64,000 bases of DNA, from positions 62,001 to 126,000 of IMG/VR virus record IMGVR_UViG_3300033182_000980, one strand, 5' to 3'. Below are positions 7,426-35,784 of this stretch, in pieces. Under the pieces are notes generated by a model. The model was not told the DNA's origin. It did not search any database and saw nothing but the letters and a program-made list of their open reading frames with translations. The number at the start of each line of letters is the position of its first letter. Within the stretch, counting starts at the first letter, position 1. The position numbers were made by a program, and so were the translations under genes.

Positions 7426-9027
7426 TCACTTAATCTTTGGTCGGGTGTCGCATCTCTGCCTTAGAAGGTAAAGATTTGTCTCGTGTGTGTTCGCCATAGA
7501 CATGATAAAGTCGTCCATACCTAATGTAAGGCCACCCTGCTCTTTAAGCATATCATAAGCGTTCTTAAAGATGACCTGTAGGCCCTCTTCAATCAATAAA
7601 GCTCTGCGTATCGGGTCATTCATGCTGTGAGCTTCGGCTAGAGGTAAGAGGTGGTTAGCCATGAGCTGTGCTTGTTCAACAGCATTAACAGCCTCTACCC
7701 CATATGTGCCGACAATCTTTTCAGCCAGTGTGTCGATTTCTTCAATAAGAGATGTGTAAATCCTCTCCATCAGCTCATGATCACCGTAGAAGCTTGATCC
7801 TTTAACCTGCCAATGGCTCGTCCAGTGTGCAAAGTGAGCACCACGAAGAACAGCTAAGAGCATTTGAAGTATGGCGAGGTTATCTGTCCGATCACAGGTG
7901 CTCGCTCTTTTGTTGTATCTCATAAGTTCTTTCTTAGCGTTCATGGCTTCCCTTGCATCATAAAACACGATCATCTCCGAGTGATTACCAGCTATACGAT
8001 AGAAATCTTCTTTGCGACCAATGAGATCTCTACGAGCTTGAGCAATAGACACTACCTCAACATCTTTGAGCTTAACAGGCTTATCCCAAATGACCTCCTC
8101 AACAAAGCCCTTTTTAGGCTTGGTGCTGGTCTTGAACTTTAAAGCCACCATCTCCTTAGCTCTGCTTTTCTTACCCCCACTCATCTGAACGGAGTAGACA
8201 TCCCAACCCCACACACCAGAGATCGCATATACACCACCAGCACTAGGTGCGTCATCATCCATGATGTGATTAGGTCTAAGATAGCCGTCTGCGATGATGT
8301 CATCTACTCGGTTCGCATAGGTGTAGTGATAGAAGAAATCTTTAGAGAGGTTAATGTGGTAGTAATACTTGCTAAAAGCATTGGATCCGTACTCTTCAAG
8401 TTCTTCATCATCAAGCTCACCACCCTCGTGATAAATCAGTTTTAGATCACGCAAAGAGGCTTGTTTATCTATGTGTCTCTTAGCTGGAGCATCTCTCTCA
8501 TCTAGGGTGAACTCTCTCCAAGCATCTTGGGGGTCTTCTTCTAAGACAGCGTAAGATCCTTCAATCAGATCGAAGAACATTTCCATGTCCTCTCTATCGT
8601 ACCACTCGACCCGATCTAAGAAATCGTTGAGGTCTACTACGATAGCCGTCTCACCTTCGACATAGATGTTAATGGCATCAAACATCTCGGACAGAGACAT
8701 GAGGTAAGCTGGCTTACCCTCGTAAACGAACTCTAGCTCGAATGGGAGGGAATACCCTATAGAGCCTCGTTTGTGCTTCTTGTAGTATTTCTTACGATAG
8801 TCTTGGCGATTCTTTCTATAGTTGGGATCAGTTCTCATTTTCTTCCTATGCTTCTTTCTGTTTTTTCGTCTTTGGACTAGATTAGTATTTCTCTTGCGTA
8901 AGTTTTTTGTCCTAGTCCTCATACGCCTTCTGCGTTTGATCTTAGGATTAGTCCTACGCTTAGTGCCAGCCTGTAGCTCTTCAGCAAAGAGGTCATCTGC
9001 AAGTATTTCGGCTAAGAAATCACTCAT
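7426..9027 (-). CDS. Multidomain protein: basic N-region, ADP-ribosyltransferase-fold-like domain, Dps/ferritin-like C-terminal domain
   Basis: Start at 9027 (overlaps upstream stop). FYHYT....IIADGYLRP is ART-like; AHFAHWTSHWQVKGSSFYGDHELMERIY...EIDTLAEK matches the Dps ferroxidase motif. Confidence 0.65.
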   Translation of the reverse strand: MSDFLAEILADDLFAEELQAGTKRRTNPKIKRRRRMRTRTKNLRKRNTNLVQRRKNRKKHRKKMRTDPNYRKNRQDYRKKYYKKHKRGSIGYSLPFELEFVYEGKPAYLMSLSEMFDAINIYVEGETAIVVDLNDFLDRVEWYDREDMEMFFDLIEGSYAVLEEDPQDAWREFTLDERDAPAKRHIDKQASLRDLKLIYHEGGELDDEELEEYGSNAFSKYYYHINLSKDFFYHYTYANRVDDIIADGYLRPNHIMDDDAPSAGGVYAISGVWGWDVYSVQMSGGKKSRAKEMVALKFKTSTKPKKGFVEEVIWDKPVKLKDVEVVSIAQARRDLIGRKEDFYRIAGNHSEMIVFYDAREAMNAKKELMRYNKRASTCDRTDNLAILQMLLAVLRGAHFAHWTSHWQVKGSSFYGDHELMERIYTSLIEEIDTLAEKIVGTYGVEAVNAVEQAQLMANHLLPLAEAHSMNDPIRRALLIEEGLQVIFKNAYDMLKEQGGLTLGMDDFIMSMANTHETNLYLLRQRCDTRPKIK

Positions 9028-10276
9028 GGTCAGCCTTCTTTCTCCGTTTTTCGGCTCGTTGGTTCTTCTGTTTAATGGTAGAGACACCACCGCCTGGTCT
9101 ACGCTTGTACTTCTCAGGGTTCTTAGCATAGTTTTTCTTGTACTTCTTGTAAGTAGGGTTATGTTTCTTACGCTTGTAGAGTCTCTTCTGCTTCAGAAGA
9201 TTTCTACGATATTTAACCCGATACCTACGCTTGTACTTTTGAGACTGGCGTTTGGCTTGCCCCTTTTGTTTCCTCTGTCGCTTATTTCCTTTAGGTGGGC
9301 GATAGTTGTATCGGAACAAAGCGACTTTGATGAGGTCATCTCCGTCTATATCCCAATACTCGAAATCTTCAACAGAACCCATGACCCTACGCTTTAGGCC
9401 GGTTGAAGTGGATTGGTCTATATGAGGGTTTCCATACTGATCGCCTGGAATACCACTTGATCTCGGACGCTCATGGAGGGCTTTTCCATCGGGATGATCG
9501 TTTAATGCACTTGGGTCTTTCTTTGGACGATTCGCTCCACCTTGACCACTAGAGTCGGGAGGTGAGTTAATAACTCCTGGACCAACTCTTTGTTCGTCAC
9601 GACCTTCTGGATGTCCACTAGGTAAAGGAAGAACTCGATCTCTTTGAGGCTTACCGTCTTCATAATCTTCTCTTGATTTCTGTGGTGATGAAGTGTCGTT
9701 ATTGATTTGGTCTTGTCGGGTTTTATCGACCCATGTTTTGACACCTGCTAAGTCTTGTGCCGGTTGAGCCGCTGACTGTAGATAGCGAAGGGCTACCCTA
9801 CTAGCAGACGCTTTCTTCTTCTCTGTGATCTCTTTAGCTTCTTCACTGAAAGTCGGAGTATTAACAGGCTTCTTCCCACGATGTTTCGCTTCTTCACGCC
9901 TTTTCTTTTTGGCAAGCTCGGCTCGGTCTTCTTTAGACATTCCCCATGCCTTCTCTCGTGGCATACACTTGAGGGGTTTTTTGCCCCCACTTGTAACATC
10001 TGACCACTCTTTTTCACTAGATATGGCACATGGGCCAACAATGTCTCCTGGTTCATAGGTCTTGTCCTCTCCATCTTCTTTTTTGATCGTGTGTTTTACA
10101 GGTGTTATAGCAATCCAATCGCCCCATGTAGCACGATCATCGGGATCTCCACCACCATGTCCTGCAAACCAAGTACCTAACCCACCCTTACCAGTGTTCT
10201 TTTTTTTGGGGTCATCACGCTTTACGGACTCTAAATAGCGTTCAGCAACCTTTTCGATAAGACTTTTATTTTTCAT
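9020..10276 (-). CDS. Hypothetical basic multidomain protein with RVA-type motifs
   Basis: MKNKSLIEKVAERYLES; KGGLGTWF; SRVALRYLQSA; very K/R-rich C-terminus. Start inferred from GAGGT spacing. Confidence 0.75.
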   Translation of the reverse strand: MKNKSLIEKVAERYLESVKRDDPKKKNTGKGGLGTWFAGHGGGDPDDRATWGDWIAITPVKHTIKKEDGEDKTYEPGDIVGPCAISSEKEWSDVTSGGKKPLKCMPREKAWGMSKEDRAELAKKKRREEAKHRGKKPVNTPTFSEEAKEITEKKKASASRVALRYLQSAAQPAQDLAGVKTWVDKTRQDQINNDTSSPQKSREDYEDGKPQRDRVLPLPSGHPEGRDEQRVGPGVINSPPDSSGQGGANRPKKDPSALNDHPDGKALHERPRSSGIPGDQYGNPHIDQSTSTGLKRRVMGSVEDFEYWDIDGDDLIKVALFRYNYRPPKGNKRQRKQKGQAKRQSQKYKRRYRVKYRRNLLKQKRLYKRKKHNPTYKKYKKNYAKNPEKYKRRPGGGVSTIKQKNQRAEKRRKKADHE

Positions 10277-10287
10277 CGCCATATACC

Positions 10288-12183
10288 TCAAGGCCTACTA
10301 GAGATGAGTACACATTTACCAGAAGAGGGGTACTTACTCGTAAGCCTAACCCAAAGTTTTTTAGCAGTCGGATTGGTACTGCCGTTTGGTACGCAATAGT
10401 GGGGGGCAAAAACGAAAGGCTTTTTCAACTCATCCCAAATGTGTCGTATAAACCCTAAATAAAGATGATCTCCTAGCCTCTGACCTAAGAAATCTTCGTA
10501 TATCTCGGACTCGGACACAAAAGCCAAATAGATACTTGAGGTTGATCTGTCTCCCGCCTTTTCTTGAAGAACCCCTATGTCATAGTCACAAGGGCTGTCA
10601 AAGTTATAACTCCTACCCCACTCATACACAGCACCTTGAATACAACCTAGTTCCTCACCACCCCAACTTGTCCCATCGTCCTCCTGCATTTGAAGATTGA
10701 GGAAGAAAAGCACATCTAACCTCTCATGTCTGGTGTGATACTTTAAATCTACTTCCTCAAACTTGTGAGGTATAGAAGATAGTTTCAAGTATCTATGAGC
10801 CACCCTCTTTGCAGACTTCTCATAGCAGTTCTTATAGGGGCGACATGAAGCCTTTTCAGAGAAGCCCATGTCATCACAGCTTTTAGACTCACAATGCTCT
10901 TTATCCCACTTGCGTGGCATCTTGAACTCGGAGCTTTGTTTCTTCCACTTGCCCCCTAATCGCTTGTACTGAGCCAAAGCCCAACCGTTAGCATAAGCCG
11001 ATGGGAAGGTCTGAAACCCCTTGCCTTCATTGACAGGATTGACGGACTCTTTACCCCTAGAAACAGGTTTACTAGACTCACCTTTAGCTAGAGCTTGTAT
11101 CTCGGACCATAGCTTCTCATCGGTAGGTATGCTCTTTCCCCCTGCTTTCCTTAGAGGTGAAGAGTTATTGGCGAAGCCACTATCATAAGGGATAACCCTA
11201 GCACTACCGCTACCACTATCATGCACATAACCTCCGTCAAAGCCCTCGGCGGGTTTACGACCATAGGACTCGGAACGATCAAGATTTCTCGATTTGAGGT
11301 TAGGTGAGTCGGGGCTTGGGCGACCTATATTCCTCGCCCCATCACCATTTGGCATTTGAGAGCCTTCACCTTTGTCCTTAAGGTCTGTGCTTTTACCTGT
11401 GGGTGTTCCATTACTAAGGGTGCTTAACTCATCGGGTGGGCTAACCTGCCTAAAGAAATCGGCAACACGCATTTTTGCTGTTTCGGGAAACTCATTTTTG
11501 ATCTTCCTCACAGCTTTAATGTACTTTTTAGGTGCGTACTTCGCTAAGTCTTTAAGCCATGCCATAGGCTCTTTTAAATGCTTAGACCTGTATGAAGGAC
11601 GACTCGACTCACCTACAACATAAGAAACGATGTTTGCCACTTCATTTGGCTTTCTTCTCGATACGAAGTTGATTGCATTGATGGTGTCCTCTAAGCGAGG
11701 GTAAAACTCATTGTCATCTAAGCGATGGTGGAGTAGCTCACCTGTTTCTTGTCTATATTGTGGAGTCCTCTCCCTAAGACCAGGAAGCCCTGCTGTTGGA
11801 GAGTCCGCTCTCGGATCACCGTCTCGTGATCTGGTATAAAGGATTTGATATACATGAACCAACTCGTGTGCGACTACTCTATGAAGGGCTTCTGCTAGTT
11901 CTCTACCCTCATAGTTTTCTTCAAAGTAGAGAAGGTTCACATAAAGAACAGAGTTAGTTGGATCGTATTTAGCTTCAACTCTACTATACTTTTCGGACGC
12001 ACTAGGGGGTATGATCTCTACCCTCAAGTCTAAGTCCTCTACATGACCGCGAGTCCTCGGTGGTGGGGGTACAGTGACATTTTTACTAAGTTTGTCATAG
12101 ACACCGACTTGGCTTAATAAGTATTCTTCGACTTGTTCCACCACAGCTCTAGGTGGTCTTATTCTACTCGTTCTACTCTGCAT
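10288..12183 (-). CDS. Multidomain protein: HExxH zincin-like domain, PSAYANG/KRLGG module, Cys module, GNAT-like C-terminus
   Basis: VAHELVHVYQ; FPSAYANGWALAQYKRLGG; MPRKWDKEHC...GFSEKASCRPYKNCY; FLGQRLGDHLY...TNPTAKKLW. Preceded by a TAGTTTCTTTAT motif and GGAG RBS. Confidence 0.65.
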   Translation of the reverse strand: MQSRTSRIRPPRAVVEQVEEYLLSQVGVYDKLSKNVTVPPPPRTRGHVEDLDLRVEIIPPSASEKYSRVEAKYDPTNSVLYVNLLYFEENYEGRELAEALHRVVAHELVHVYQILYTRSRDGDPRADSPTAGLPGLRERTPQYRQETGELLHHRLDDNEFYPRLEDTINAINFVSRRKPNEVANIVSYVVGESSRPSYRSKHLKEPMAWLKDLAKYAPKKYIKAVRKIKNEFPETAKMRVADFFRQVSPPDELSTLSNGTPTGKSTDLKDKGEGSQMPNGDGARNIGRPSPDSPNLKSRNLDRSESYGRKPAEGFDGGYVHDSGSGSARVIPYDSGFANNSSPLRKAGGKSIPTDEKLWSEIQALAKGESSKPVSRGKESVNPVNEGKGFQTFPSAYANGWALAQYKRLGGKWKKQSSEFKMPRKWDKEHCESKSCDDMGFSEKASCRPYKNCYEKSAKRVAHRYLKLSSIPHKFEEVDLKYHTRHERLDVLFFLNLQMQEDDGTSWGGEELGCIQGAVYEWGRSYNFDSPCDYDIGVLQEKAGDRSTSSIYLAFVSESEIYEDFLGQRLGDHLYLGFIRHIWDELKKPFVFAPHYCVPNGSTNPTAKKLWVRLTSKYPSSGKCVLISSRP

Positions 12184-12212
12184 AATAAGCTCCTTTTCTT
12201 TATATTGGAGCG

Positions 12213-12224
12213 ATAAAGAAACTA
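12213..12224 (-). promoter_or_regulatory. Motif A
   Basis: TAGTTTCTTTAT upstream of the 12183-7426 operon. Confidence 0.6.
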
Positions 12225-12228
12225 TAAC

Positions 12229-12240
12229 TGTAACCCCTTA
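12229..12240 (+). promoter_or_regulatory. Motif B (TGTAACCCCTTA)
   Basis: Upstream of the ncRNA candidate and TATAAT. Confidence 0.5.
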
Positions 12241-12253
12241 GTTATTGTATAAT

Positions 12254-12510: not shown

Positions 12511-12523
12511 TGTAACCCCTTAT
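12511..12523 (+). promoter_or_regulatory. Motif B (TGTAACCCCTTAT)
   Basis: Upstream of the 12566/CHC2 genes. Confidence 0.55.
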
Positions 12524-12565
12524 TTATAGAAACGAAGCCCCAATCTATCCAGAAAGGAATGAACC

Positions 12566-12799: not shown

Positions 12800-13308
12800 G
12801 CAAACGAGCTGAACGGATAAAAGAGAAGATCCCCATCCTCTCGGTATTAAGTGCCTATAACTATGATGTACATGGTCGGGATCATCAGCAACAGTTTAGA
12901 TGCGACCTACATGGTGATGGTTCGGATAACGCACCCTCGGCTCGTGTGTATCCAGAGACAAACACATGGTTCTGTTTCGCCTGTGGTAAAGTGCGAGACT
13001 CCATCGCTACGGTCATGGAGAAAGAGGGGTTAGACTTTGGTAAGGCTTGTACTGCCCTTGAACTCAAATATGGACTTGAGGTCTGGAAGTACGAGCCTAA
13101 GAAGGACATCTTTGAGGACACCTATGAAGACCCTACACGCAAGGAAATACTAGTGCGTAGGGTAGAGGGTCTATTAAACGAGAAAACCTCTAGGAGAGAG
13201 GATTATGAGGACACCTTACGCTATTGGGAGGTGTTCAATATGCTCTCCTCACTAGAGGACTCTAAGGTGCGTCAATGGGAGAAGCTATATAAGGCTTTAT
13301 CCTCTTAG
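12796..13308 (+). CDS. Stand-alone CHC2 zinc-finger protein (DnaG primase zinc-binding domain)
   Basis: FRCDLHGD...PSARVY...WFCFACG; ATGA overlap with the upstream gene; no TOPRIM domain. Confidence 0.85.
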   Translation: MSKRAERIKEKIPILSVLSAYNYDVHGRDHQQQFRCDLHGDGSDNAPSARVYPETNTWFCFACGKVRDSIATVMEKEGLDFGKACTALELKYGLEVWKYEPKKDIFEDTYEDPTRKEILVRRVEGLLNEKTSRREDYEDTLRYWEVFNMLSSLEDSKVRQWEKLYKALSS

Positions 13309-14981
13309 AAGCGACCACCGTCATCTTCTGGTGGGTTATACTTTAAGCCAAGATTTTTAGCGATGATCTCAATCGCTTCTGTGTTCTCGGCTAACATACG
13401 ACCTGCTTCGCCATAGACACCTCTAAGAACCTCATTAAACTGAGAGTCATTGAGCGTCCACATATCACGCTCAAGTTTAGCCTTAGTGGTCATAGGGTCT
13501 ACATTGAGGAGTTCTAAGATCACATCAATATCCAATGACCCCTTCTGATAAAGATTGAAGAGGGCATCGAATGTATCTTGGTTGTCTCTTAGCCCAAGTC
13601 GAGTGAAGCTAAGGGTAGGGTGTATTACAACCTCATCACCATCTTCATCTTCCTCAATGAAGCCCATGCGTCTACACATCGGTTTCAAGATGTTCTCCTC
13701 GACCATCTCTTGAAGAACCTCACGCATGAGCATATAGCGTGTGTTGATGACTTCTAGGTTGATCCTATCACCACTATAGCTTGACTCGCCCGAAAGCAGA
13801 GACTCGGTAACACCTAGACCAGCATACATTTGTCGGTCGGTCATGTCGTATTCACCCGATAGCTCAAGTAGACGAGAGTCTGCACCCATCTCCTCCCAAG
13901 AAACTTGGAAGTTAGCGATGATCGAGTAATCGGGGTCTTGGAGTGCAAGGTCAACTTGATCTCTTAACTCCTCAACATCAGCCGCGTCCATATCTTCTGC
14001 ATAAACGAGTCGGATAGGTGTCATGTGTCTTGAGGCGATTGAGGTTTGAGCCTGTCTTAACTTATCACGATACACCAAGATTCTGAGGCAACGCTCAAGC
14101 ATGGAGTGTCCACGAGGCTCATATTGAGATTTCTTACGAGCCATGTAGTAGACGAACGACCCTTGATCTGGATCGGTGTTGAGGTCAATGTTGCGTCCAT
14201 CTCGGATGGCTTCAACGACATCACCTGGCATTGAGTCTACTATCCTAAGAGCTGAAGGATCATTAACCGAAGCTCGTTCGACTACATCACGAGTCTTGCT
14301 GTCGGGGATGAGCTGGATGATCTTTTCGTTGGTGAAAGGAAAGCTCTCCATGTGGACTTGTTCGGGAGGGAGGATGCGAACACCAGTCCACCCTTTATAG
14401 TTCTTCTTGAGCCACTTGTAAGCTCGTTCATGGGAGTCCTCATATTCAGTCCACTCTGTGAAGGCAGACCCATCTTCTTTGAGAACATTCCGACCACTAT
14501 GAGTCACCTCTTGAGGCACATCTGGATTATTATCTTCACAGAAAACGAACACCTCACCGAGTAGGTTAAACTCATGTAGGATTTCTATAAGGCGGTGAAG
14601 TAGTCCGACACGCTTCGCCCACTTTTCACAGAACCTAAGTGCCTCATAAGCCATATCCCGATTACGAGCTTTGGGTAGACCTAATCTGATCTTAGAGAGG
14701 GGTAGCTCTGTATGTAGGTCTATCGCTTGACCTACGAAGGGGTCTGTTCGATAGAAGAACCTAAAATAGTTGCGTTGTTCGTCTTGGCTTTGGGGTAGCT
14801 CAAGGAAGTCAGTCGATAGCTCTGGTGAGTAGAAGTTCCCACCCGATCCCATCATAGAGCCACCTGTGGTCATAGCGACCTTGACTCTTGATTTCATCTC
14901 GGCAGGATTGAGCTTACGAGTGATCGCTTTTGATCGGGGTTTAATCTTCCCAACTGGTTTGGCTTCTAGTTCTTCGCTCAT
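13305..14981 (-). CDS. Phage portal protein
   Basis: 558 aa; RFFYRTDPFVGQAIDLHTELPLS, YEPRGHSMLERCLRIL and SYSG..INLEV resemble large-phage portal sequences. Confidence 0.7.
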   Translation of the reverse strand: MSEELEAKPVGKIKPRSKAITRKLNPAEMKSRVKVAMTTGGSMMGSGGNFYSPELSTDFLELPQSQDEQRNYFRFFYRTDPFVGQAIDLHTELPLSKIRLGLPKARNRDMAYEALRFCEKWAKRVGLLHRLIEILHEFNLLGEVFVFCEDNNPDVPQEVTHSGRNVLKEDGSAFTEWTEYEDSHERAYKWLKKNYKGWTGVRILPPEQVHMESFPFTNEKIIQLIPDSKTRDVVERASVNDPSALRIVDSMPGDVVEAIRDGRNIDLNTDPDQGSFVYYMARKKSQYEPRGHSMLERCLRILVYRDKLRQAQTSIASRHMTPIRLVYAEDMDAADVEELRDQVDLALQDPDYSIIANFQVSWEEMGADSRLLELSGEYDMTDRQMYAGLGVTESLLSGESSYSGDRINLEVINTRYMLMREVLQEMVEENILKPMCRRMGFIEEDEDGDEVVIHPTLSFTRLGLRDNQDTFDALFNLYQKGSLDIDVILELLNVDPMTTKAKLERDMWTLNDSQFNEVLRGVYGEAGRMLAENTEAIEIIAKNLGLKYNPPEDDGGRF

Positions 14982-18904: not shown

Positions 18905-19554
18905 TTATGAAATACTTTAACCACCCACCCACAATGCGTAGAGTTTATGATGACGAAGAAGCTCAAACTCAACATCGGAAAAACGCACAAGCCGATTTCT
19001 ATGGTGAGATTACGGTAAGCGACAACCACATCTACCTCTATCAAGGCATCTCTCCCAAGGCTGTTATGGAGATGGGCATCGCTATCAAGTCCATTGGTCA
19101 ACAGATCATCAACATGGTCACTGATCTTGGACTCTCCCAAGCACCTGCTATCCACCTTCACATTAACTCTGGTGGTGGGTGTGCCTTTAGTGGTCTTGCT
19201 GGAGCGAGCCATATCTTAGACTCGGACATCCCTGTGTTCACCTATGTAGAGGGTTCAGCGGCTTCTGCGGCCACGATCATGTCTTGTGTCGGGGCTAAAC
19301 GCTTCATCACAGAGCATAGCTTCATGCTCATTCACCAGATCAGCACTGGTGTATGGGGTACATACGAGAACCTAAACGATGAGAAAGAGTCTATGGACTC
19401 GCTCATGGAGATGTTGGAGTCAATCTACCTCAAGAACACCAAGATGAAGAAGAAGCAACTCAAAGAGCTTCTAAAGCGTGATCTCTGGATGAACCCTAAG
19501 AAGTGTCTTGAGCTTGGATTGGTAGACGAGATCATCAAGTACGAGCGTGTTTAA
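18901..19554 (+). CDS. clpP: ClpP-like serine protease
   Basis: IHLHINSGGG, EGSAASAATIM (catalytic Ser), SFMLIHQ (His), RDLWMNPKKCLELGLVDEI. Confidence 0.85.
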   Translation: MIMKYFNHPPTMRRVYDDEEAQTQHRKNAQADFYGEITVSDNHIYLYQGISPKAVMEMGIAIKSIGQQIINMVTDLGLSQAPAIHLHINSGGGCAFSGLAGASHILDSDIPVFTYVEGSAASAATIMSCVGAKRFITEHSFMLIHQISTGVWGTYENLNDEKESMDSLMEMLESIYLKNTKMKKKQLKELLKRDLWMNPKKCLELGLVDEIIKYERV

Positions 19555-22067: not shown

Positions 22068-22074
22068 TTTTCTC

Positions 22075-24340: not shown

Positions 24341-24440
24341 ATAATAAATACCACAAGCATAAGAGTCGCTTGGTTCTTCTTTGAGAGATCTCAAGTGCAA
24401 CTATGAGAAAAAACCGATTGAAAAAATGAAAGGAAAAGGC

Positions 24441-27101
24441 ATGGGATTCCCTTTTTCAGACCACGCATTGTCGCTATTGAACTCTTATTACATGAAAGAG
24501 TCGGACGGATCACCACAGGAAGCATTTAAGAGAGCCGCTTACGCATACACCCCCAATAAAGAGCTTGCAGAGAGAGTGTTAGGGTACGCAACCAAAGGAT
24601 GGTTCATGTTCAGTTCGCCCATACTCTCCAACGCTGAGAGTACAGGTATGCCGATTTCTTGCTTCCTCACTTATGTTCCCGACACAGTTGAAGGTCTGAT
24701 CGAACATACAGAGGAGCTACGCTGGATGAGCGTTATGGGAGGTGGTGTCGGTGGGCATTGGGATCATGTTCGCTCGGTCAGCAAAAAAGCACCTGGTCCA
24801 ATCCCTTTCCTCAAGACTGTTGACTCGGATATGGTCGCATATAGACAGGGGTCAACTCGCAAAGGTAGCTACGCCGCTTACCTAGACATTAGCCATCCCG
24901 ATGTTGTTGAGTTTATGAACCTACGCCTCCCGACTGGTGGAGATACTAACCGTAAGTGCTTCAACCTCAATAACGCCCTTAACCTCACAGATGACTTTAT
25001 GACTGCTGTGATGAATGGCGACACTTGGGATCTCATTGATCCAGCAGACCAAACCGTTAGAGACACCGTAGATGCTCGTGAGCTTTGGCAACGCATTCTT
25101 GAAGTACGCTTTCGTACAGGAGAGCCTTACCTCAACTTTATTGATGAGGCGAATAGAAATCTCCCTCAACCCCTTAAGGATAAGGGGCTAAAGATTCATG
25201 GCTCGAACCTCTGTGTCAGAGGAGATACACAAGTTCTCACTCGTGACGGTTATTTCCCGATCTCATCTTTGGTGGGTCAAGATGTTGAGGTGTGGAACGG
25301 AAAACATTGGTCGATGACCACCATTGTCCAAACAGGAGAAGATCAAGAGATCCTTGAGGTCATTCTTGACAATGGAACTACTCTTTACACGACACCTTAT
25401 CACAAGTTTTATGACCATAAGGGGGAGGTTGTAGAAGCTAAAGATTTAACTACCTCCACAAAGCTGTTGAAATTTGAGATGCCTGTGGTTGATGGTGAGG
25501 GTGATTGGGAGAACGCTTATTCTTGTGGCTTCTTCACAGGGGACGGAACATATAACCACCTCCATCAACCTGTATCTTATCTTTATGGTAAGAAGAAGGC
25601 ATTGCTTGACAGGGTATCTACACCTCTTTGTCGAGTTCGCACAGGTTCTAAGTCAAATCGCTTTTCAGTCCTCCATGACAAGTCTGAAATCAAGGCAAAG
25701 TACGAAGTGCCTCTTGGTATGTCCTTAAAGACTCGCTTAGATTGGCTTTCTGGACTCTTAGACGCAGATGGTTGCGTTGCTAGGAATGGGCTAAACCAAA
25801 GTTTACAGCTTGTGTCTACGAACCGAGAATTCCTTACTGATTTGAGTCTCATGTTAAACACACTTGGAGTTCAACCTAGAGTCTCTGATTTCATGCCTGA
25901 GAGAACGGTGGACTTTGGTTCAGAGAGGGGTGGCGAGTATCGTTGTAAGGAAGCATGGAGGGTCTTAATCAACTCTAATGACACACAAAAGTTACTTGGT
26001 TTGGGTTTGAATACTCATCGCCTAGTCTTAAAAGAGCATAAACCACAAAGGTCAGCCTCAAGGTTTGTTCGTGTCTTTAGTGTCTCTAAGTCACAAAATG
26101 CGGATACTTATTGCTTCAACGAACCAAAGAGACACATGGGAGTGTTTAATGGTGTTCTTACAGGCAACTGTAATGAGATCCACCTCCCAACAGGACCTAA
26201 TCGCTCGGCAGTCTGTTGCCTCTCTAGTCTCAATGTAGAGATGTTTGATGAGTGGAAAGACACCACCATCGTAGAGGACTTGATCGAGTTCCTAGATGAT
26301 GTTCTTCAGTATTTCATTGAGAACGCACCTCCTCAACTTGAGAAGGCGATCAAGAGTGCCGAAGCAGAACGCTCACTTGGTCTAGGAACAATGGGCTTCC
26401 ATGCCTACTTGCAAAAGAAGGGGCTACCCTTCGAGTCAGTCTTTGCTGTCTCGGCTAACCGAAAAATTTACTCGACCATTAAGGAGAGGGCAGTCGCTTC
26501 CTCTAAGCGTTTAGCAGAAATCAAGGGGGAGTATCTTGACGGTATTGGGTCGGGCATGAGGAACAGTCATCTTCTCGCCATCGCCCCTAATGCTAACTCG
26601 GCTATCATCCTTGATACAAGCCCAAGCATTGAACCGTGGAAGTCAAATGCTTTCACTCACAGGACACGAGCTGGTTCATTCTTGCAGTTCAACAAGTATC
26701 TTCAAGCTGTGCTTGAGAAGAAAGAGGGCATTGATCTTGATGAGGTGAAGCAGAGCATCATTCTCAATCAAGGGAGCGTACAGCACCTCGATTTCTTGAC
26801 CCAGCTTGAAAAGGACACATTCAAGACTGCATTTGAGATCGACCAGATGTGGATTGTGGAACACGCTTCCGTTCGTCAAGAGTGGGTGTGTCAAGGTCAG
26901 TCAGTCAACCTATTCTTCCCTGCTGGCTCGGATAAGAACTATGTCAACGCTGTTCACTTGAGTGCATGGAAGAAGAAGCTCAAGGGGTTGTACTACCTTC
27001 GCACCAACGCTGGTGTAGTTGCTGATAAGGTGAGTGAGAAGATTGAGCGTAAGGCATTAAAGGACTATGACCTTGATGAGTGCATGAGCTGTCAAGGTTA
27101 A
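24441..27101 (+). CDS. nrdA: Class Ia ribonucleotide reductase alpha subunit with intein
   Basis: FSSPILSN, PISCF, GGGVG, RKGSYAAYL, SNL|C...CNE, LAIAPNANS, QGQSVNLF, LKGLYY, C-terminal CMSCQG. Start 24441 by RBS (ORF open from 24381). Confidence 0.95.
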   Translation: MGFPFSDHALSLLNSYYMKESDGSPQEAFKRAAYAYTPNKELAERVLGYATKGWFMFSSPILSNAESTGMPISCFLTYVPDTVEGLIEHTEELRWMSVMGGGVGGHWDHVRSVSKKAPGPIPFLKTVDSDMVAYRQGSTRKGSYAAYLDISHPDVVEFMNLRLPTGGDTNRKCFNLNNALNLTDDFMTAVMNGDTWDLIDPADQTVRDTVDARELWQRILEVRFRTGEPYLNFIDEANRNLPQPLKDKGLKIHGSNLCVRGDTQVLTRDGYFPISSLVGQDVEVWNGKHWSMTTIVQTGEDQEILEVILDNGTTLYTTPYHKFYDHKGEVVEAKDLTTSTKLLKFEMPVVDGEGDWENAYSCGFFTGDGTYNHLHQPVSYLYGKKKALLDRVSTPLCRVRTGSKSNRFSVLHDKSEIKAKYEVPLGMSLKTRLDWLSGLLDADGCVARNGLNQSLQLVSTNREFLTDLSLMLNTLGVQPRVSDFMPERTVDFGSERGGEYRCKEAWRVLINSNDTQKLLGLGLNTHRLVLKEHKPQRSASRFVRVFSVSKSQNADTYCFNEPKRHMGVFNGVLTGNCNEIHLPTGPNRSAVCCLSSLNVEMFDEWKDTTIVEDLIEFLDDVLQYFIENAPPQLEKAIKSAEAERSLGLGTMGFHAYLQKKGLPFESVFAVSANRKIYSTIKERAVASSKRLAEIKGEYLDGIGSGMRNSHLLAIAPNANSAIILDTSPSIEPWKSNAFTHRTRAGSFLQFNKYLQAVLEKKEGIDLDEVKQSIILNQGSVQHLDFLTQLEKDTFKTAFEIDQMWIVEHASVRQEWVCQGQSVNLFFPAGSDKNYVNAVHLSAWKKKLKGLYYLRTNAGVVADKVSEKIERKALKDYDLDECMSCQG
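25212..26168 (+). mobile_element. Intein (319 aa) with LAGLIDADG homing endonuclease in NrdA
   Basis: CVRGDT start, TTPYHKF block B, GFFTGDG and GLLDADG motifs, ends GVLTGN followed by +1 Cys (the NLCxE catalytic Cys). Confidence 0.92.
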
Positions 27102-29834: not shown

Positions 29835-29842
29835 GACATTTG

Positions 29843-29854
29843 TAGATTGTTTAT
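29843..29854 (+). promoter_or_regulatory. Motif A variant
   Basis: TAGATTGTTTAT upstream of the 2H gene. Confidence 0.45.
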
Positions 29855-29901
29855 ATGACTACAGTTTATATGCGTTTACCAATCTCTAAAAGGAGTTTAA
29901 C

Positions 29902-30456
29902 ATGAACTACAATCGCATGATCCGAAGAGTCGCTTCTGCACACATGAGGAAGCTCGCACAAGAGAAGCCAGCAAGCGTTATGTTCGCTGAAGCTGTTATT
30001 GATACGAGAGACTTACTCAACTGGTTTCAAGATCAATCTGGTCTTGATCCCGAAGCAATGGGTTGGAAGGTTGCCGCCCACCACATGACCATAGAATTCT
30101 TTGACAAGAAAGAAAAGAAAGCTCTTAAGAGAGAGGGTCGTGCAGAGTCTAACATCCTTGAGCCTTATGCTGATCTCATTGGTAAGTCTGTTATTCTTGA
30201 TCTAGTCGGTTATGCACATGACGATAAGGGCATGGCTGTTCTTGTTGAGCCTAAAGGTCCTCTAGCTCGCCTTGTTAAGAACGCTGATCCACATATCACC
30301 ATCGCTACTAATGGTGTCGGGGCTAAATACAGCAACGAGCTTCTTGCAAAGGGAGAAATCATTCCAGCTCGTGGTTCGATTCAAGCACGAGTCGGCTGGA
30401 AAGATGCTCGTTCGGGTCAAGATATGTACGATCTTCCTTGGGACTTTGGTCAGTAA
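29902..30456 (+). CDS. 2H phosphoesterase (tRNA-ligase CPDase-like) with RVA-type leader
   Basis: Two HxT motifs: AHHMTI and DPHITIA; N-terminal MIRRVASAHMRKLA. Confidence 0.75.
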   Translation: MNYNRMIRRVASAHMRKLAQEKPASVMFAEAVIDTRDLLNWFQDQSGLDPEAMGWKVAAHHMTIEFFDKKEKKALKREGRAESNILEPYADLIGKSVILDLVGYAHDDKGMAVLVEPKGPLARLVKNADPHITIATNGVGAKYSNELLAKGEIIPARGSIQARVGWKDARSGQDMYDLPWDFGQ

Positions 30457-30575: not shown

Positions 30576-31166
30576 ATGCAAGATTATCAAGATGACGAGA
30601 AGTTCATCTTCGCAGACTTTCTTGAAGCTGATACAGCACTCAAAGGTGTCAGCGATACCTTTCGCACATACGGACTTATGTTTGAGTGTGCCATCGAGGA
30701 AAACGCTAGACAGAACCTCATCGAGCAACCAATGACCGAGAAGCGTAATGGTGTCCGAGGGATCTCCGATGAGATCCTTGAAAACCAAAACACCTTCTAT
30801 GCTGTCGGAGCGTTCCTCAAGGTCTTGCATGAGCTTGGCTTTAGGGTCGAGGAAACTGTCGAAGAAGAGTGCGACTTTTGTGGTGTGATGCTCTGTGATG
30901 AAGATCGTTTACAGATCGACATCGAGTTTAACTATGGTGAGGATATGATCGAGTATTCGATCAACTTTAATGATGAGCGAGAGCATACAGGACACACATC
31001 TGCCGAGGAGTTTTTAGAGGGCATCTTTAACGGTGGTTGGAACTTGCCTAAGCTCACAGGTGTACTCAACCCCTCTAGCCTCTACGATGACCTTGAGGGC
31101 TTTATGCGAACCTTTAGGAGATCATGGTCGGAGTATAAGAAGGTTCTCAAAGAGAAGGTGGGCTGA
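30576..31166 (+). CDS. Acidic hypothetical protein
   Basis: AGGAGG RBS; preceded by TGTAACCCCTTAT. Confidence 0.75.
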   Translation: MQDYQDDEKFIFADFLEADTALKGVSDTFRTYGLMFECAIEENARQNLIEQPMTEKRNGVRGISDEILENQNTFYAVGAFLKVLHELGFRVEETVEEECDFCGVMLCDEDRLQIDIEFNYGEDMIEYSINFNDEREHTGHTSAEEFLEGIFNGGWNLPKLTGVLNPSSLYDDLEGFMRTFRRSWSEYKKVLKEKVG

Positions 31167-31239
31167 TTTGTAGTTTTTATATTCTCTCATTGTAGGGTGG
31201 TATCAATAACATTCAACCCTATAACGAGAGGTTAAGAAC

Positions 31240-32214: not shown

Positions 32215-32286
32215 CAAGCATTTAGGCTTGTTTAAATCTTAGTCCTCAAGTACGCTTTTCAATAAATACTTTGAAAGGACACTTGA

Positions 32287-33375: not shown

Positions 33376-33384
33376 TTTATTTAT
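33373..33384 (+). promoter_or_regulatory. Motif A
   Basis: TAGTTTATTTAT upstream of leader protein 2; TAG is the GIY-YIG stop. Confidence 0.65.
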
Positions 33385-33434
33385 TGACTCTCCATTGGTG
33401 ATCTTTAACCCTTAACCGACAATGGAGAACTATT

Positions 33435-33779
33435 ATGAGAAGATCAGCAAGCGAAGTCTTAAGAAACTTAGAAATGCGTATCGCAAGACTTGAGAAGCAA
33501 GCAGGATTCACTGTAGGGCAAGAAGTACCTTATACACTAAGAACCCTTAAAAAAGTGATGTCAGAGGGTTATGGATTCAAAGTGATAAGTGTAGGGGGGG
33601 GTTTGAGTGATACTCTTGAATACAGTTTAACCTCCGAGCAAGTGGCTAAGATCAGTTCTAGGGGGAAGGTTGATGTTATGCTAAAAAACATTCAACAAGA
33701 GCTAAAGTTCTCGATAGAGCCTAACCTAAAGAGGAAGGGTCGTAAAAACTTCATTGTCCTCACAGAAAACCCTGCTTAA
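33435..33779 (+). CDS. MRRSASE-leader protein 2
   Basis: MRRSASEVLRNLEMRIARLEKQA. Confidence 0.85.
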   Translation: MRRSASEVLRNLEMRIARLEKQAGFTVGQEVPYTLRTLKKVMSEGYGFKVISVGGGLSDTLEYSLTSEQVAKISSRGKVDVMLKNIQQELKFSIEPNLKRKGRKNFIVLTENPA

Positions 33780-33860
33780 TGGCGAATGGGCAGAGGCTGT
33801 GAGTACCAAGTCTCTCAAGTAAGGGCGAATGGGATTGGTCAAATATCTCGGCATGATTTG

Positions 33861-33872
33861 TAGTTTATTTAT
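33861..33872 (+). promoter_or_regulatory. Motif A
   Basis: TAGTTTATTTAT upstream of leader protein 3. Confidence 0.65.
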
Positions 33873-33922
33873 AGGTTCTCCATTGGTGATCTTTTAACCC
33901 TTTAACCTCATGGAGAAATAAA

Positions 33923-34249
33923 ATGAGAAGATCAGCATCAGAAATTATCAGAAATCTTGAGCAAAGAATTGCTCGTCTTGAAAGTGAAAATGCGAAGACC
34001 GCAGGTCTTATGACAGTCCACACCTTAGATACAAGTAGTCGTGAAATACCTTACGGCACAACTGAATCAGAAGTTATGAACACTCAAGACCTTCCAAGTT
34101 TGCTTTTAAAGTCTGAAGTGACCATTACAAGAGACGGACTACAAGCAATAGATAGAGACGGTCGAGTCCACACGATTGAAATCTCAAAAGACGAGCTTAT
34201 TAAAGCTCTACTACCTCTAGCTAGACCTACATCTGTTAAGATGAAATAA
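33923..34249 (+). CDS. MRRSASE-leader protein 3
   Basis: MRRSASEIIRNLEQRIARLESENAKTA. Confidence 0.85.
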   Translation: MRRSASEIIRNLEQRIARLESENAKTAGLMTVHTLDTSSREIPYGTTESEVMNTQDLPSLLLKSEVTITRDGLQAIDRDGRVHTIEISKDELIKALLPLARPTSVKMK

Positions 34250-34253
34250 GAAA

Positions 34254-35132
34254 TTAATTAAGTCTTTTTGTCAGTTCGAGATCAAACTTTTCGATTGCTT
34301 CTCTAAACTGATCTTCGGACATGATTTGACCTCTCGCTGAACCAGCGATTTGATCGTGACCCCCAGCCCTATCTCCCCACCACTCTTGAACAAGTCGTCT
34401 ACAAGATAGGTTAGGGATTGGGTCGGCAGTAGAAATCCTAATCTTCTTATATTTTTCATCGTAAGTGATGATCGCATTTTCTCCACGATAGAGGTGGTTG
34501 ACCTTTTCACCTCTTGTTCGTCTAACGATCAATCCACAGGGTCGCATCTCTACAAAAGATGACTCATCTAGCTTTTCTTGGAGGTAGATGTGAGCATTAC
34601 CCATCCGAGTAGCTAGATGACCGTCATTGAGCATTTCCTTTATGAAGTCGAACGCTTGGTAGCAGAAATCGGTCACATCGTTGTTTCGTTTGGGGTCTAT
34701 CTCTGGATGGTTTTCATTGATCCATGCGTTTAGTCCATTATAAAGAACCCAACAGGGGTGGTCTTGTCTTGCCTTGTGGATGCCATTGGTGTCGATATGT
34801 TCAGCATAGAACCAGAATACAGGATTATCCTCGAACTGATCTGTAGCTCTCATAAGCCCACCGAGAGTGTCGATGTCGATATGTGAGATGAGGGCTACTT
34901 CATCATCATTGAGCTTTGGTATGTTCGAGTCATTACAAGGGGCTGGTCTACCAAAGGGGGTAACATGGCGACCGACATAAGGAGAACCGAGAGGTTGGTG
35001 GTGAGCGGCGGTGTACTTTGTACCTTCAAGGACGAACCCCCCATATTCTGCTTCCACCGTGAGTGCAGGAGGATTTGATAATCTAAGAGTGTCGGAGGCT
35101 AACTGTGAGGTCGGGGAAAGTATAACTAACAT
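34254..35132 (-). CDS. DHH-like phosphoesterase-related protein
   Basis: AAHH, SHIDIDTLGG and C-terminal AGGHDQIAGS resemble DHH/DHHA1 motifs. Confidence 0.45.
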   Translation of the reverse strand: MLVILSPTSQLASDTLRLSNPPALTVEAEYGGFVLEGTKYTAAHHQPLGSPYVGRHVTPFGRPAPCNDSNIPKLNDDEVALISHIDIDTLGGLMRATDQFEDNPVFWFYAEHIDTNGIHKARQDHPCWVLYNGLNAWINENHPEIDPKRNNDVTDFCYQAFDFIKEMLNDGHLATRMGNAHIYLQEKLDESSFVEMRPCGLIVRRTRGEKVNHLYRGENAIITYDEKYKKIRISTADPIPNLSCRRLVQEWWGDRAGGHDQIAGSARGQIMSEDQFREAIEKFDLELTKRLN

Positions 35133-35136
35133 TTTG

Positions 35137-35148
35137 TAGATCCTTTAT
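35137..35148 (+). promoter_or_regulatory. Motif A variant
   Basis: TAGATCCTTTAT upstream of the HAD gene. Confidence 0.4.
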
Positions 35149-35190
35149 AATGAGCGATTACTAAACATATTACCTTTGAGGAGAATAGAC

Positions 35191-35784
35191 ATGAGAAATC
35201 TTGTTGCGAGAGTGGCGACAAAGTATATGAAAACAAGCTCGGAGAATCTTGAGCTTCATATCTTTGACTTTGATAACACATTGTTCCGTAGCCCCGAACC
35301 ACCAGAGTGGTGGTCGAATAAGAAAATGGGCTATTGGTTCAATGAGGCTATTAGTTTGAGTGAGCCTTTTATCCCTCAAAAGCCAAGTGGGGATTATTGG
35401 TATGGGAGCGTTGTCGGTGAGGCTAAACGCTCTATCTCTAACATGGACACTCTTGCGATCATGTGTACAGGTCGCCTTAATGATAACGGTGCGATGCGTT
35501 ATCGTGTTGCCGAGTTATTAAAGGGTAAAGGGTTGGACTTTGATGAGGTTCACCTAAAGCCAGGTACAGGATCGACATCTCGCTACAAGGCTAAACTGAC
35601 CTTTGATCTCCTCAAGAAGTACCCAAACATTCAGAGCGTGTCTGTTTGGGAAGATACTCAGAAGAACCTCGATGCCATTGAGACAGTGTGTGATCACTTT
35701 GGCGTTGAGTTCAACGCTCACCTCATTAAACCTAACCCATACCCTGTCTCTATCACCAAAGAGCAGTATGACCTGCTAAAGTAA
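35191..35784 (+). CDS. HAD-superfamily phosphatase (Swiss-army-knife RNA-repair-like HAD) with RVA-type leader
   Basis: HIFDFDNTLFRSP (DxD), CTGR, LKP, VWED; N-terminal LVARVATKYMKTS. Confidence 0.75.
   Translation: MRNLVARVATKYMKTSSENLELHIFDFDNTLFRSPEPPEWWSNKKMGYWFNEAISLSEPFIPQKPSGDYWYGSVVGEAKRSISNMDTLAIMCTGRLNDNGAMRYRVAELLKGKGLDFDEVHLKPGTGSTSRYKAKLTFDLLKKYPNIQSVSVWEDTQKNLDAIETVCDHFGVEFNAHLIKPNPYPVSITKEQYDLLK

What the first reader, a model, noticed from the sequence alone, without database searches (positions are those of the whole stretch)
9020..35784. Second leader-like motif RVAxxY[LM] on a separate set of putative virion proteins
Seen: IEKVAERYLES and SRVALRYLQSA (10276- gene), KRVAHRYLKLS (12183- gene), IRRVASAHMRKLA (29902) and VARVATKYMKTS (35191). 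Each is at an N-terminus or directly before a new domain and is followed by a [KRQ]-x-[AS] site. All are in transcription units headed by motif A or a variant. Inference: a second helical targeting or packaging signal, possibly binding a different head partner.
Basis: partly seen in the sequence, partly recalled or inferred. Interest (0 to 1): 0.65.

Follow-up and report, generated by a model that had tools for sequence, protein, structure and literature searches.

The report
Portable peptide tag on megaphage proteins
A short helical peptide (core [R/K]-V-A-x-x-Y-[L/M]) sits at either end of, or between the modules of, at least 13 mostly unrelated late-promoter proteins of an uncultivated 376-kb phage-G-like phage; it is most likely an address label that loads enzymes into the phage head for delivery with the DNA, but packaging has not been shown.

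Summary
Genome-wide (the window is 62001-126000 of a 375,691-bp IMG/VR record) the motif occurs 13 times against 0.36 expected. A profile trained only on relatives finds 14 copies in 13 proteins, above every control.

The copies are amino-acid-level, about 12-residue amphipathic helices. Eight are N-terminal, two lie within the last 11 residues, and four are at demonstrable module junctions.

The tag is portable:
- One orthologue pair carries it at opposite ends.
- Remote HAD homologues lack it.
- Orthologues of the 1171-aa head-module protein end with it, contain it or lack it.
- Gene fusions and fissions occur at it.

Carriers include an ADP-ribosyltransferase, GNAT-like and HExxH modules, a 2H phosphoesterase, a Pnkp-like HAD phosphatase, CCA-adding enzymes, polybasic proteins, and two proteins encoded directly upstream of the head protease, scaffold and capsid genes.

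All nine tagged transcription units whose promoter I could assign use the promoter class that also drives the capsid, sheath and baseplate operons.

Best reading (about 0.5): a position-independent head-targeting or cargo-loading peptide, working like the T4 CTS or encapsulin cargo peptides. The receptor is unidentified and packaging is inferred. The proposed [KRQ]-x-[AS] site is not supported.

The parts
10202..10261 (-). Tag 1 of the 418-aa protein. N-terminal, core KVAERYL at 10232-10252.
   Evidence: Scores 11.4 bits with the HMM trained on relatives.
9749..9808 (-). Tag 2 of the 418-aa protein. Internal at aa 160, core RVALRYL at 9779-9799. It is flanked by lysine-rich and Pro/Gln-rich linker sequence.
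   Evidence: HMM score 12.9 bits. In relative L105 the part after this tag is fused through another tag to a Dps-like domain.
10756..10815 (-). Tag of the 631-aa protein. Internal at aa 460, core RVAHRYL at 10786-10806. It lies at the junction between a long low-complexity linker and a C-terminal GNAT-like module.
   Evidence: HMM score 17.4 bits. Residues 455-631 align from the tag onward with a free-standing 179-aa protein that starts with the tag (E 4e-15).
29917..29976 (+). N-terminal tag of the 184-aa 2H phosphoesterase. Core RVASAHM at 29926-29946.
   Evidence: HMM score 8.2 bits. Pfam tRNA_lig_CPD matches at E 1.4e-4, below the family cut-off. The L111 orthologue has the tag with Y and reaches the cut-off.
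35200..35259 (+). N-terminal tag of the 197-aa HAD phosphatase. Core RVATKYM at 35209-35229.
   Evidence: HMM score 12.8 bits. The AlphaFold2 model has pLDDT 95 and the tag is helix 4-15. The HAD core aligned to T4 Pnkp phosphatase starts at residue 15-18. Remote homologues start at the first strand without the tag.
9020..10276 (-). Gene for the 418-aa two-tag protein, which has a polybasic C-terminal tail.
   Evidence: It matches only an unknown-function PHROG.
10288..12183 (-). Gene for the 631-aa protein. Architecture: HExxH module, low-complexity linker, tag, GNAT-like module.
   Evidence: The HExxH module is shared with the 635-aa paralogue at genome 205355-207262 (E 1e-11).
29902..30456 (+). 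Gene for the tagged 2H phosphoesterase.
35191..35784 (+). Gene for the tagged HAD_SAK_1 / Pnkp-like 3'-phosphatase.
   Evidence: (E 1.4e-18).
12212..12226 (-). Class-B promoter-like element 43 nt upstream of the 631-aa gene. It heads the 631 / 418 / Dps-like unit.
29841..29855 (+). Class-B promoter-like element 61 nt upstream of the 2H gene. Neighbouring genes carry class-A elements.
35135..35149 (+). Class-B promoter-like element upstream of the HAD gene.
13305..14981 (-). Context: the portal gene, about 1.1 kb upstream of the 631 / 418 / Dps-like unit on the same strand.
   Evidence: 27% identity to phage G portal gp14 (E 8e-54). Matches phrog_16240 portal protein at 4e-32.
7426..9027 (-). 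Context: a polybasic protein with a Dps/ferritin-like domain and no confident tag in this genome. Its orthologue in relatives L105 and L126 carries an internal tag.

Best explanation
The peptide is a portable, position-independent docking helix. Its consensus is small/hydrophobic - x - [R/K] - V - A - [S/N/H] - x - [Y/F] - [L/M], continuing as a helix. One face is hydrophobic and the other basic.

The phage expresses the carriers from the same promoter class as its structural genes. I infer three steps. First, the helix binds one conserved component of the assembling prohead; candidates are the scaffold's conserved N-terminal domain, the inner face of the near-invariant capsid protein, or the portal. 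Second, the carriers are trapped inside the head. Third, they enter the host with the DNA. The carriers are an ADP-ribosyltransferase, GNAT-like and HExxH modules, RNA-end-healing enzymes, CCA-adding enzymes, polybasic DNA-binding-type proteins and a protein with a hydrophobic Gly/Ala-rich segment.

The tag works at either terminus or in linkers, and no conserved cleavage motif accompanies it, so it is probably not removed.

Shown: the motif, its statistics, its portability, the carrier set, the promoter association and the gene neighbourhoods.
Inferred: binding to a head component, encapsidation and ejection.
For: 1. Real and peptide-level.

2. Terminal or junction placement: 10 of 14 tags are terminal (p about 1e-7). 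All four internal tags sit at proven module borders.

3. Portability:
- The orthologues G000 11335-11958 and G001 L054 (71% identity) carry the tag at the N- and the C-terminus respectively.
- Nearly all listed HAD homologues at 47% identity or more have it, while seven remoter ones start at strand 1 without it.
- Orthologues of the 1171-aa protein end 13-15 aa after the tag, or carry tag plus Zn ribbon, or have the Zn ribbon without the tag.
- Structurally the tag lies outside the HAD core.

4. Family-wide: relatives G001, G002 and G003 show 8, 6 and 8 DNA-pattern hits against 1, 1 and 0 in controls.

5. Head context:
- The tagged 344-aa and 1171-aa genes open the operon protease - scaffold - decoration - capsid.
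- The tagged 631-aa and 418-aa genes follow the portal gene.
- In relatives, a tagged 2H enzyme, a tagged Dps-like protein and a 121-aa protein lie 3-5 kb downstream of the capsid gene.

6. Regulation:
- All nine tagged transcription units whose promoter I could assign are headed by the class-B element (the ADP-ribosyltransferase unit could not be assigned).
- The same element heads the decoration/capsid, head, sheath, baseplate and portal operons.
- None of the 74 units behind class A and/or C elements alone carries a tag or the other leader.

7. Carrier types match proteins known or predicted to be packaged. The T4 ADP-ribosyltransferase Alt and polyvalent-protein domains (ART, metallopeptidase, SNF2) are examples (PMC5512222). 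Pfam ART-PolyVal matches at E 1.9e-12.

8. Precedent: the T4 CTS is a 10-20-residue peptide that ensures incorporation into the prohead (PMC5694885, PMC3012670). [quoted passage not shown]
Against: - No proteomic or structural evidence exists for this uncultivated phage.
- The receptor is unknown.
- The single complex-prediction job gave no verdict (see Tried and rejected).
- The 2H and HAD genes sit among replication genes, and RNA-repair enzymes are not established virion cargo.
- Class B also heads genes with no obvious virion role (a topoisomerase-IB-like gene, a WGR protein), so it may be 'middle plus late' rather than strictly late.
- Proximity of tagged genes to head genes is only modestly significant (p 0.015 by tag, 0.05 by gene).
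- Phage G and Tunturi_5, the cultured relatives, have no tags, so their virion data do not transfer.
- Other members of the clade show only 2-3 strict matches.
- Unlike the T4 CTS, no processing site is seen.
- The tool output does not show whether the tag helix in the HAD model is free or packed on the domain.
Confidence: 0.5

Rival explanations
1. A hub-docking peptide unrelated to the particle. The helix recruits late-expressed enzymes to a common phage or host factor inside the infected cell, replacing the covalent fusions seen elsewhere. Such a factor could be an RNA-repair or effector assembly, the ribosome, RNA polymerase or a clamp.
For: - In other lineages the same HAD domain is fused to a 2H domain or to a kinase (P0168 and P0170). 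Here the two enzymes are separate and both are tagged.
- The HAD is structurally closest to T4 Pnkp phosphatase and to Pnkp1 of the Pnkp1/Rnl/Hen1 complex.
- Placement at either terminus or in linkers is typical of hub-binding short linear motifs (established knowledge of PIP-box and clamp-binding motifs).
Against: - The best-conserved carriers are the two genes that open the head-morphogenesis operon.
- The carriers include polybasic, coiled-coil and hydrophobic proteins with no enzymatic link to RNA repair.
- The promoter class is shared with structural operons.
- The motif resembles no known clamp-, SSB- or RNA-polymerase-binding motif (my own knowledge, not tested).
Confidence: 0.22
2. A recognition element for the head-maturation protease. 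The motif would mark junctions where polyproteins are cut into modules, rather than targeting anything.
For: - Internal tags lie exactly at module borders. Fused and split versions of the same modules exist in relatives.
- The protease gene is adjacent to two carriers.
- The T4 CTS combines targeting with cleavage (PMC5694885).
Against: - Ten of 14 tags are within 17 residues of a terminus, where cutting would release almost nothing.
- No conserved residue outside the helix core could serve as a scissile site.
- C-terminal tags end 4-8 residues after the core.
Confidence: 0.1
3. A degron or adaptor signal for a Clp-type protease, or a generic membrane-binding amphipathic helix.
For: - A ClpP homologue lies at window 18907-19554.
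- Clp recognition signals and membrane-targeting helices are terminal (established knowledge).
- The peptide is amphipathic and basic.
Against: - The genome has no ClpX.
- V and A are invariant and Y/F nearly so across 53 unique tags. That argues for a specific protein pocket, not a lipid surface or an unfolded degron.
- A degron on the proteins of the head operon is hard to rationalise.
Confidence: 0.06
4. Chance, or simple paralogy: the motif is the conserved start of one duplicated domain family.
For: Three carriers are paralogues in which the tag precedes the same GNAT-like module: the 179-aa and 165-aa proteins and the C-terminal module of the 631-aa protein.
Against: - At least ten carriers share no detectable similarity outside the tag.
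- C-terminal copies are followed by nothing.
- Enrichment is 13 against 0.36 expected.
- The tag switches ends between orthologues.
Confidence: 0.01

Closest known systems
Capsid targeting sequence (CTS) of phage T4 internal proteins and Alt
   Same: Both are short peptides shared by otherwise unrelated proteins, including an ADP-ribosyltransferase. The T4 CTS directs these proteins into the prohead core, and they are injected with the DNA (PMC5694885, PMC3012670, PMC5512222). Three carriers here even start MK[P/S]Y[Q/E], like the T4 CTS start MKTYQ (sequence as printed in 10.1101/2021.01.19.427310); this may be coincidence.
   Different: The T4 CTS is strictly N-terminal and is cut off by the prohead protease. 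This tag also works from the C-terminus and from linkers, shows no cleavage motif, and has a different consensus. Packaging is not demonstrated here.
Encapsulin cargo-loading (targeting) peptides
   Same: Both are short terminal peptides on diverse enzymes, ferritin-like proteins among them, that dock cargo inside an HK97-fold shell. Tagged Dps/ferritin-like proteins occur in relatives here.
   Different: The consensus differs. Encapsulins usually load one cargo type encoded next to the shell gene, whereas here 13 or more carriers are scattered over a 376-kb phage genome. Binding to the shell is untested.
Polyvalent proteins of phages and conjugative elements (Iyer et al. 2017, PMC5512222)
   Same: The effector repertoire is the same (ART-PolyVal, HExxH metallopeptidase, SNF2-type helicase, acetyltransferase-like modules), and delivery with the DNA is predicted in both. 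The 631-aa protein is a small multi-module example.
   Different: Polyvalent proteins join many domains in one chain. Here most modules are separate proteins that share a tag, and fusions and fissions occur at the tag.
Phage P1 Dar proteins and N4 virion RNA polymerase
   Same: These are large enzymes incorporated into heads through defined parts of the protein (PMC5512222, PMC9024508).
   Different: No common short motif shared by many cargoes is described for those systems.
Shared C-terminal coat-binding helix of the staphylococcal phage 80-alpha scaffold and SaPI CpmB (from my own knowledge, not checked here)
   Same: Different proteins use the same short helix to bind the inner face of one capsid protein.
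   Different: That helix is restricted to scaffolding-type proteins and to the C-terminus. The scaffold here has its own, different, invariant C-terminal 35 residues.

Membership tests
T4-type capsid targeting sequence | N-terminal propeptide of 10-20 residues | tested here: not met
   Only 8 of 14 tags are N-terminal; 2 are C-terminal and 4 internal.
T4-type capsid targeting sequence | Removed by the prohead protease at a consensus site next to the signal | tested here: inconclusive
   No conserved residue outside the helix core in 53 unique tags. Cleavage itself cannot be tested in silico.
T4-type capsid targeting sequence | Carriers are found inside the head and the peptide is sufficient to package a foreign protein | not testable with these tools
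   The phage is uncultivated. Only context and analogy are available.
Encapsulin cargo-loading peptide | Short terminal peptide on cargo enzymes of an HK97-fold shell | tested here: met
   The tags are terminal. The shell protein has the HK97 fold (Pfam Phage_capsid_4; PDB 6wkk at E 3.6e-63).
Encapsulin cargo-loading peptide | Binds a pocket on the inner face of the shell protein | tested here: inconclusive
   The one complex-prediction job returned 'no answer'.
Encapsulin cargo-loading peptide | Known consensus (Gly/Ser/Leu-rich with terminal basic residues) | tested here: not met
   The consensus here is [RK]VA[S]x[YF][LM]. The comparison with the encapsulin consensus is from my own knowledge.
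Polyvalent proteins | Effector domains typical of the class (ART-PolyVal, metallopeptidase, SNF2 helicase) | tested here: met
   - ART-PolyVal matches at E 1.9e-12.
- HExxH modules are present.
- The SNF2/DEAD hits in the 2234-aa protein are weak, and that protein carries only a low-scoring tag-like site.
Polyvalent proteins | Many domains in one polypeptide | tested here: not met
   Most carriers have a single module. The 631-aa and 948-aa proteins have two or three.
Clp degron | A cognate unfoldase encoded with the protease | tested here: not met
   TIGR00382 (clpX) has no match in the genome, while the controls were positive.

The most novel reading that the evidence does not exclude
A globally distributed clade of phage-G-like megaphages uses two orthogonal, portable peptide address labels to define a cargo proteome of about 40 proteins. 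One label is this either-end RVAxxY[L/M] helix. The other is the N-terminal coiled-coil leader MRRSASE...RIARLERQA, found on 27 further proteins. The cargo would include ready-made RNA-end-healing and CCA-repair enzymes, an ADP-ribosyltransferase and acetyltransferases. These would be loaded into the head without being processed and injected with the DNA, and the tag would double as a recombination joint for shuffling cargo modules.
Probability: 0.3. Interest if true: 0.8.

Novelty: new variant of a known kind. Interest (0 to 1): 0.62.

Why it matters
If the tag is a head-loading signal, three things follow.
- The injected proteome of uncultivated huge phages could be read directly from sequence.
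- RNA-repair and CCA-adding enzymes would be revealed as pre-packaged counter-defence.
- It would offer a 12-residue tag, usable at either end, for loading foreign proteins into very large capsids.

Even if the partner is not the head, this is a clean natural example of a short linear motif that organises more than a dozen phage proteins. It moves between termini and marks the points where genes fuse and split.

Tried and rejected
1. Complex prediction. Input: capsid protein, scaffold residues 1-165 and the last 37 residues of the 414-aa carrier. The verdict was 'no answer (no support, and no evidence against)', because a control with the capsid protein replaced scored as high as the real complex.

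2. The first AlphaFold2 model of the HAD protein, from a 5-row alignment, had pLDDT 53 and was unusable. It was replaced by a 41-row model.

3. Regex hits rejected as tags:
- The capsid protein's own RVARVFM aligns to VVTKIVM of phage G gp27 and is invariant as part of the capsid sequence.
- KVAAHHM in the 2H enzyme is the HxT catalytic motif.
- A tag-like RIASDFL after the scaffold N-domain in some relatives is not conserved.
- SKYMSLL in the protease C-terminal extension is not conserved as a tag.

4. The [KRQ]-x-[AS] 'site' is not conserved.

5. A DNA-level element is rejected because of synonymous codon variation.

6. Phage G and Tunturi_5 have no tags, and of the carriers only the CCA enzyme has a phage G homologue. 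Their virion data therefore cannot be transferred.

7. Searches that found nothing: megablast of the region against phage records, and a PDB sequence search with the 2H protein.

8. One look-up of the ART protein by exact sequence failed, probably because the gene start was called differently.

9. Not tested: whether the phage forms a nucleus-like compartment. I had no family accession for chimallin.
Full report
**What the window is.** The window is bases 62001-126000 of a 375,691-bp IMG/VR virus record rated 100% complete. The same contig is on record as JGI 3300033182 Ga0369852_1061056.
- Its 292-aa major capsid protein (genome 48887-49765, minus strand) is 89% identical to that of the uncultured 485-kb phage LR745208. 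It is 46% identical to the major head protein of Tunturiibacter phage Tunturi_5 and 38% to gp27 of Bacillus phage G.
- It matches the solved phage G capsid protein 6wkk at E 3.6e-63.
- So this is an uncultivated phage-G-like huge phage. I laid the whole genome in the script box and called 443 ORFs crudely.

- Genome-wide, [RK]VA..[YH][LM] occurs 13 times. Shuffled proteomes give a mean of 0.36 (maximum 3 in 200 shuffles) and the reversed proteome gives 0. RVA..Y[LM] occurs 10 times against 0.07 expected.
- A profile built only from 41 unique tags of relatives, with none from this genome, scores 14 sites in 13 proteins at 7.1-20.1 bits. The best site scores 5.1 in the reversed proteome and 3.8 in five shuffled proteomes.
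- The codons under the invariant residues vary freely, so the constraint is on the peptide.
- From 53 unique tags the core is A/I at -2, R (79%) or K, V (100%), A (100%), S/N/H, R/K/L/A/M, Y (87%) or F, L/M/I, then mostly K/N/E.
- Hydrophobic positions at -2, +1/+2, +5/+6 and +9 have the spacing of one face of an alpha helix. In a confident AlphaFold2 model of the HAD carrier (mean pLDDT 95) residues 4-15 form a helix.
- The proposed [KRQ]-x-[AS] site is only this helix continuing. K/R make up about 41% at +7 and A/S about 35% at +9.

**Where the tag sits.**
- Eight tags start within the first 17 residues.
- Two lie within the last 11 residues.
- Four are internal (terminal bias p about 1e-7).

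Each internal tag is at a proven module border:
- Residues 455-631 of the 631-aa protein align, from the tag onward, with free-standing 179-aa and 165-aa GNAT-like proteins that begin with the tag (E 4e-15 and 3e-20).
- The last 113 residues of the double CCA-adding enzyme form a separate ORF that begins with the tag in relative G003.
- Orthologues of the 1171-aa protein end 13-15 residues after the tag.
- The part of the 418-aa protein after its second tag is fused, through another tag, to a Dps-like domain in relative L105.
- In G001 the sequence before the 631-aa protein's tag runs through a single tag into the sequence that follows the first tag of the 418-aa protein.

**The tag is an add-on and it moves.**
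- Of 55 HAD homologues found in the large protein collection, nearly all listed at 47% identity or more carry the N-terminal tag directly before the first strand.
- Seven remoter homologues start at that strand and lack the tag. Two of these are fused instead to a 2H domain or to a kinase.
- The structural core shared with T4 Pnkp 3'-phosphatase (5uj0_B: Z 14.6, rmsd 2.2, 133 aligned) starts at model residue 18. The core shared with Pnkp1 (4xrp_A: Z 14.1) starts at residue 15. Both lie past the tag's seven-residue core (residues 7-13).
- The orthologues G000 11335-11958 and G001 L054:1491-2171 are 71% identical over a 156-residue core. The first carries the tag (a variant with one extra residue, low-scoring in the profile) at the N-terminus, the second at the C-terminus.
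- Orthologues of the 1171-aa protein share an SH3-like domain and a Gly/Pro linker. After these they have a tag plus Zn ribbon, a tag alone, or a Zn ribbon alone.

**Who carries it**:
- an ART-PolyVal ADP-ribosyltransferase;
- a 2H phosphoesterase;
- a HAD_SAK_1 / Pnkp-like phosphatase;
- a tandem CCA-adding enzyme;
- three GNAT-like modules;
- an HExxH module;
- a polybasic 418-aa protein;
- a 414-aa protein with a hydrophobic Gly/Ala-rich segment;
- small proteins of 75 and 157 aa;
- the 344-aa and 1171-aa proteins.

In relatives the carriers also include a C39-like peptidase, a Dps/ferritin-like protein and a 121-aa protein. Degenerate copies occur in the 635-aa and 412-aa paralogues; a weak tag-like site (1.1 bits, within the range of the controls) lies near the end of a 2234-aa SNF2-like protein. 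No replication, transcription or core structural protein carries the tag.

**Context.**
- The 344-aa and 1171-aa genes open a minus-strand operon. It continues with the head maturation protease (38% identity to Tunturi_5 gp331; phrog_18299), an acidic scaffold-like protein, a decoration-like protein and the capsid gene. In some relatives the 344-aa and 1171-aa genes are fused.
- The 631-aa and 418-aa genes lie just downstream of the portal gene.
- The GNAT and CCA carriers head the long minus-strand cluster that runs into the baseplate genes.
- In relatives, tagged genes lie 3-5 kb downstream of the capsid gene.
- Proximity to head genes is only modestly significant in this genome.

**Regulation.** Three promoter-like classes recur.
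- The class-B element heads the operons for decoration/capsid, head, sheath, baseplate and a gp329-like virion protein. A variant precedes the portal unit.
- All nine tagged transcription units whose promoter I could assign are class B. The unit of the ADP-ribosyltransferase could not be assigned.
- Among 126 promoter-bearing first genes, the 74 behind class A and/or C elements alone include none with this tag or with the other leader. The 52 behind class B include 20 with the other leader and 5 with this tag (Fisher p 3e-12 for both leaders together and 0.011 for this tag alone).
- The 2H and HAD genes, although embedded among replication genes, have their own class-B elements while their neighbours have class A or C.

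**Spread.**
- Relatives G001-G003 are enriched for the motif.
- LR745208 keeps it in the homologue of the 1171-aa protein and in a few others.
- Other clade members show 2-3 strict matches.
- Phage G and Tunturi_5 have none.
- The capsid protein of the clade is near-invariant: 573 viral contigs, with the best 80 at 92-100% identity, and 2102 proteins in the large collection. In the same loci the protease, scaffold, decoration protein and 1171-aa protein are 22-94% identical.
- The scaffold keeps a conserved N-terminal domain and an invariant last 35 residues.

**Interpretation.** The shown facts define a portable docking helix shared by a late-promoter set of accessory proteins, with its most conserved carriers inside the head-morphogenesis operon. 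This works like the T4 capsid targeting sequence and like encapsulin cargo peptides, so head loading followed by co-injection is my preferred mechanism (about 0.5).

It is not a member of the T4 CTS family as defined: it is not restricted to the N-terminus, and no processing site is seen.

The receptor is open. The single complex-prediction job gave no verdict and is listed only under Tried and rejected.

The main rival is a docking motif for a non-virion hub (about 0.22). The fused HAD-2H and HAD-kinase relatives make this attractive for the RNA-repair carriers. However, it does not explain the head-operon carriers or the promoter class.

No paper in the library describes this motif.

Noticed in passing
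window 6342(-), 17012(+), 33435(+), 33923(+), 43836(+), 45342(+); 27 proteins genome-wide: A different and longer leader, MRR[ST]ASE[IV]I..LE.R[IV]ARLE[RK]QA (about 23 aa, coiled-coil-like). It starts 25 proteins and is internal in 2. Twenty of the 27 lie directly behind a class-B promoter element and none behind class A or C alone. By eye it resembles coiled-coil segments of the scaffold protein.
   Followed up: partly
genome-wide; in the window e.g. 12212-12226(-), 29841-29855(+), 35135-35149(+), 16053(+), 33371(+), 33859(+): Three promoter-like classes recur. Class A is GTAACCCCTTATCTATA (about 67 sites, clustered before small genes near 330-362 kb). Class B is TAATAGTTTATTTAT / TTRTAGnTYnYTTAT (52 first genes, including the capsid, sheath and baseplate operons). 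Class C is ATCATATAA (about 42 sites, sometimes fused to the class-A upstream half).
   Followed up: partly
genome 48887-49765(-) (outside the window); loci L073-L152: The capsid protein is near-invariant across hundreds of contigs (92-100% identity). In the same loci the neighbouring protease, scaffold, decoration protein and 1171-aa protein diverge to 22-76%. The scaffold's last 35 residues are equally invariant.
   Followed up: partly
genome 52134-53582(-): The head maturation protease has a 220-aa C-terminal extension that the Tunturi_5 and phage G homologues lack. The extension consists of an acidic linker, a conserved NDT[IV]IKEG and a helical domain of about 95 aa.
   Followed up: partly
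window 24381-27101(+), 2804-5286(+); genome 47474-48385(-): Selfish elements interrupt core genes. The ribonucleotide reductase large subunit has a LAGLIDADG_3 insert. IMPDH is split, with a Hint domain and a NUMOD3 endonuclease between the halves. A LAGLIDADG_2 gene lies just downstream of the capsid gene.
   Followed up: no
loci L050 (G001), L105, L033 (G003), L103/L106: Gene fusions and fissions happen at the tag. Examples: a 631/418 hybrid in G001, 418-tail plus Dps in L105, a split CCA enzyme in G003, and 344 fused to 1171 in L103/L106. The tag-coding stretch may act as a recombination joint.
   Followed up: partly
genome 15198-16274(-), 261617-262156(-), 262153-262650(-): Three tagged proteins begin MK[P/S]Y[Q/E], the same first five-residue pattern as the T4 CTS MKTYQ. 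This may be coincidence.
   Followed up: no
genome 205355-207262(-), 207274-208512(-): A degenerate tag variant, R[IL]A..[HV]L followed by KKW/DKW, precedes a shared C-terminal module in the 635-aa HExxH paralogue and in the C39-like peptidase. The G001 orthologue of the peptidase instead ends with a canonical tag.
   Followed up: partly
window 49760-57025(+), 57084-63338(+): Two adjacent giant ORFs of 2421 and 2084 aa, which I did not annotate.
   Followed up: no
window 18907-19554(+): A ClpP homologue is encoded about 4 kb from the portal gene, and the genome has no ClpX. Phage G particles are reported to contain ClpP and ClpX (PMC12484599).
   Followed up: partly
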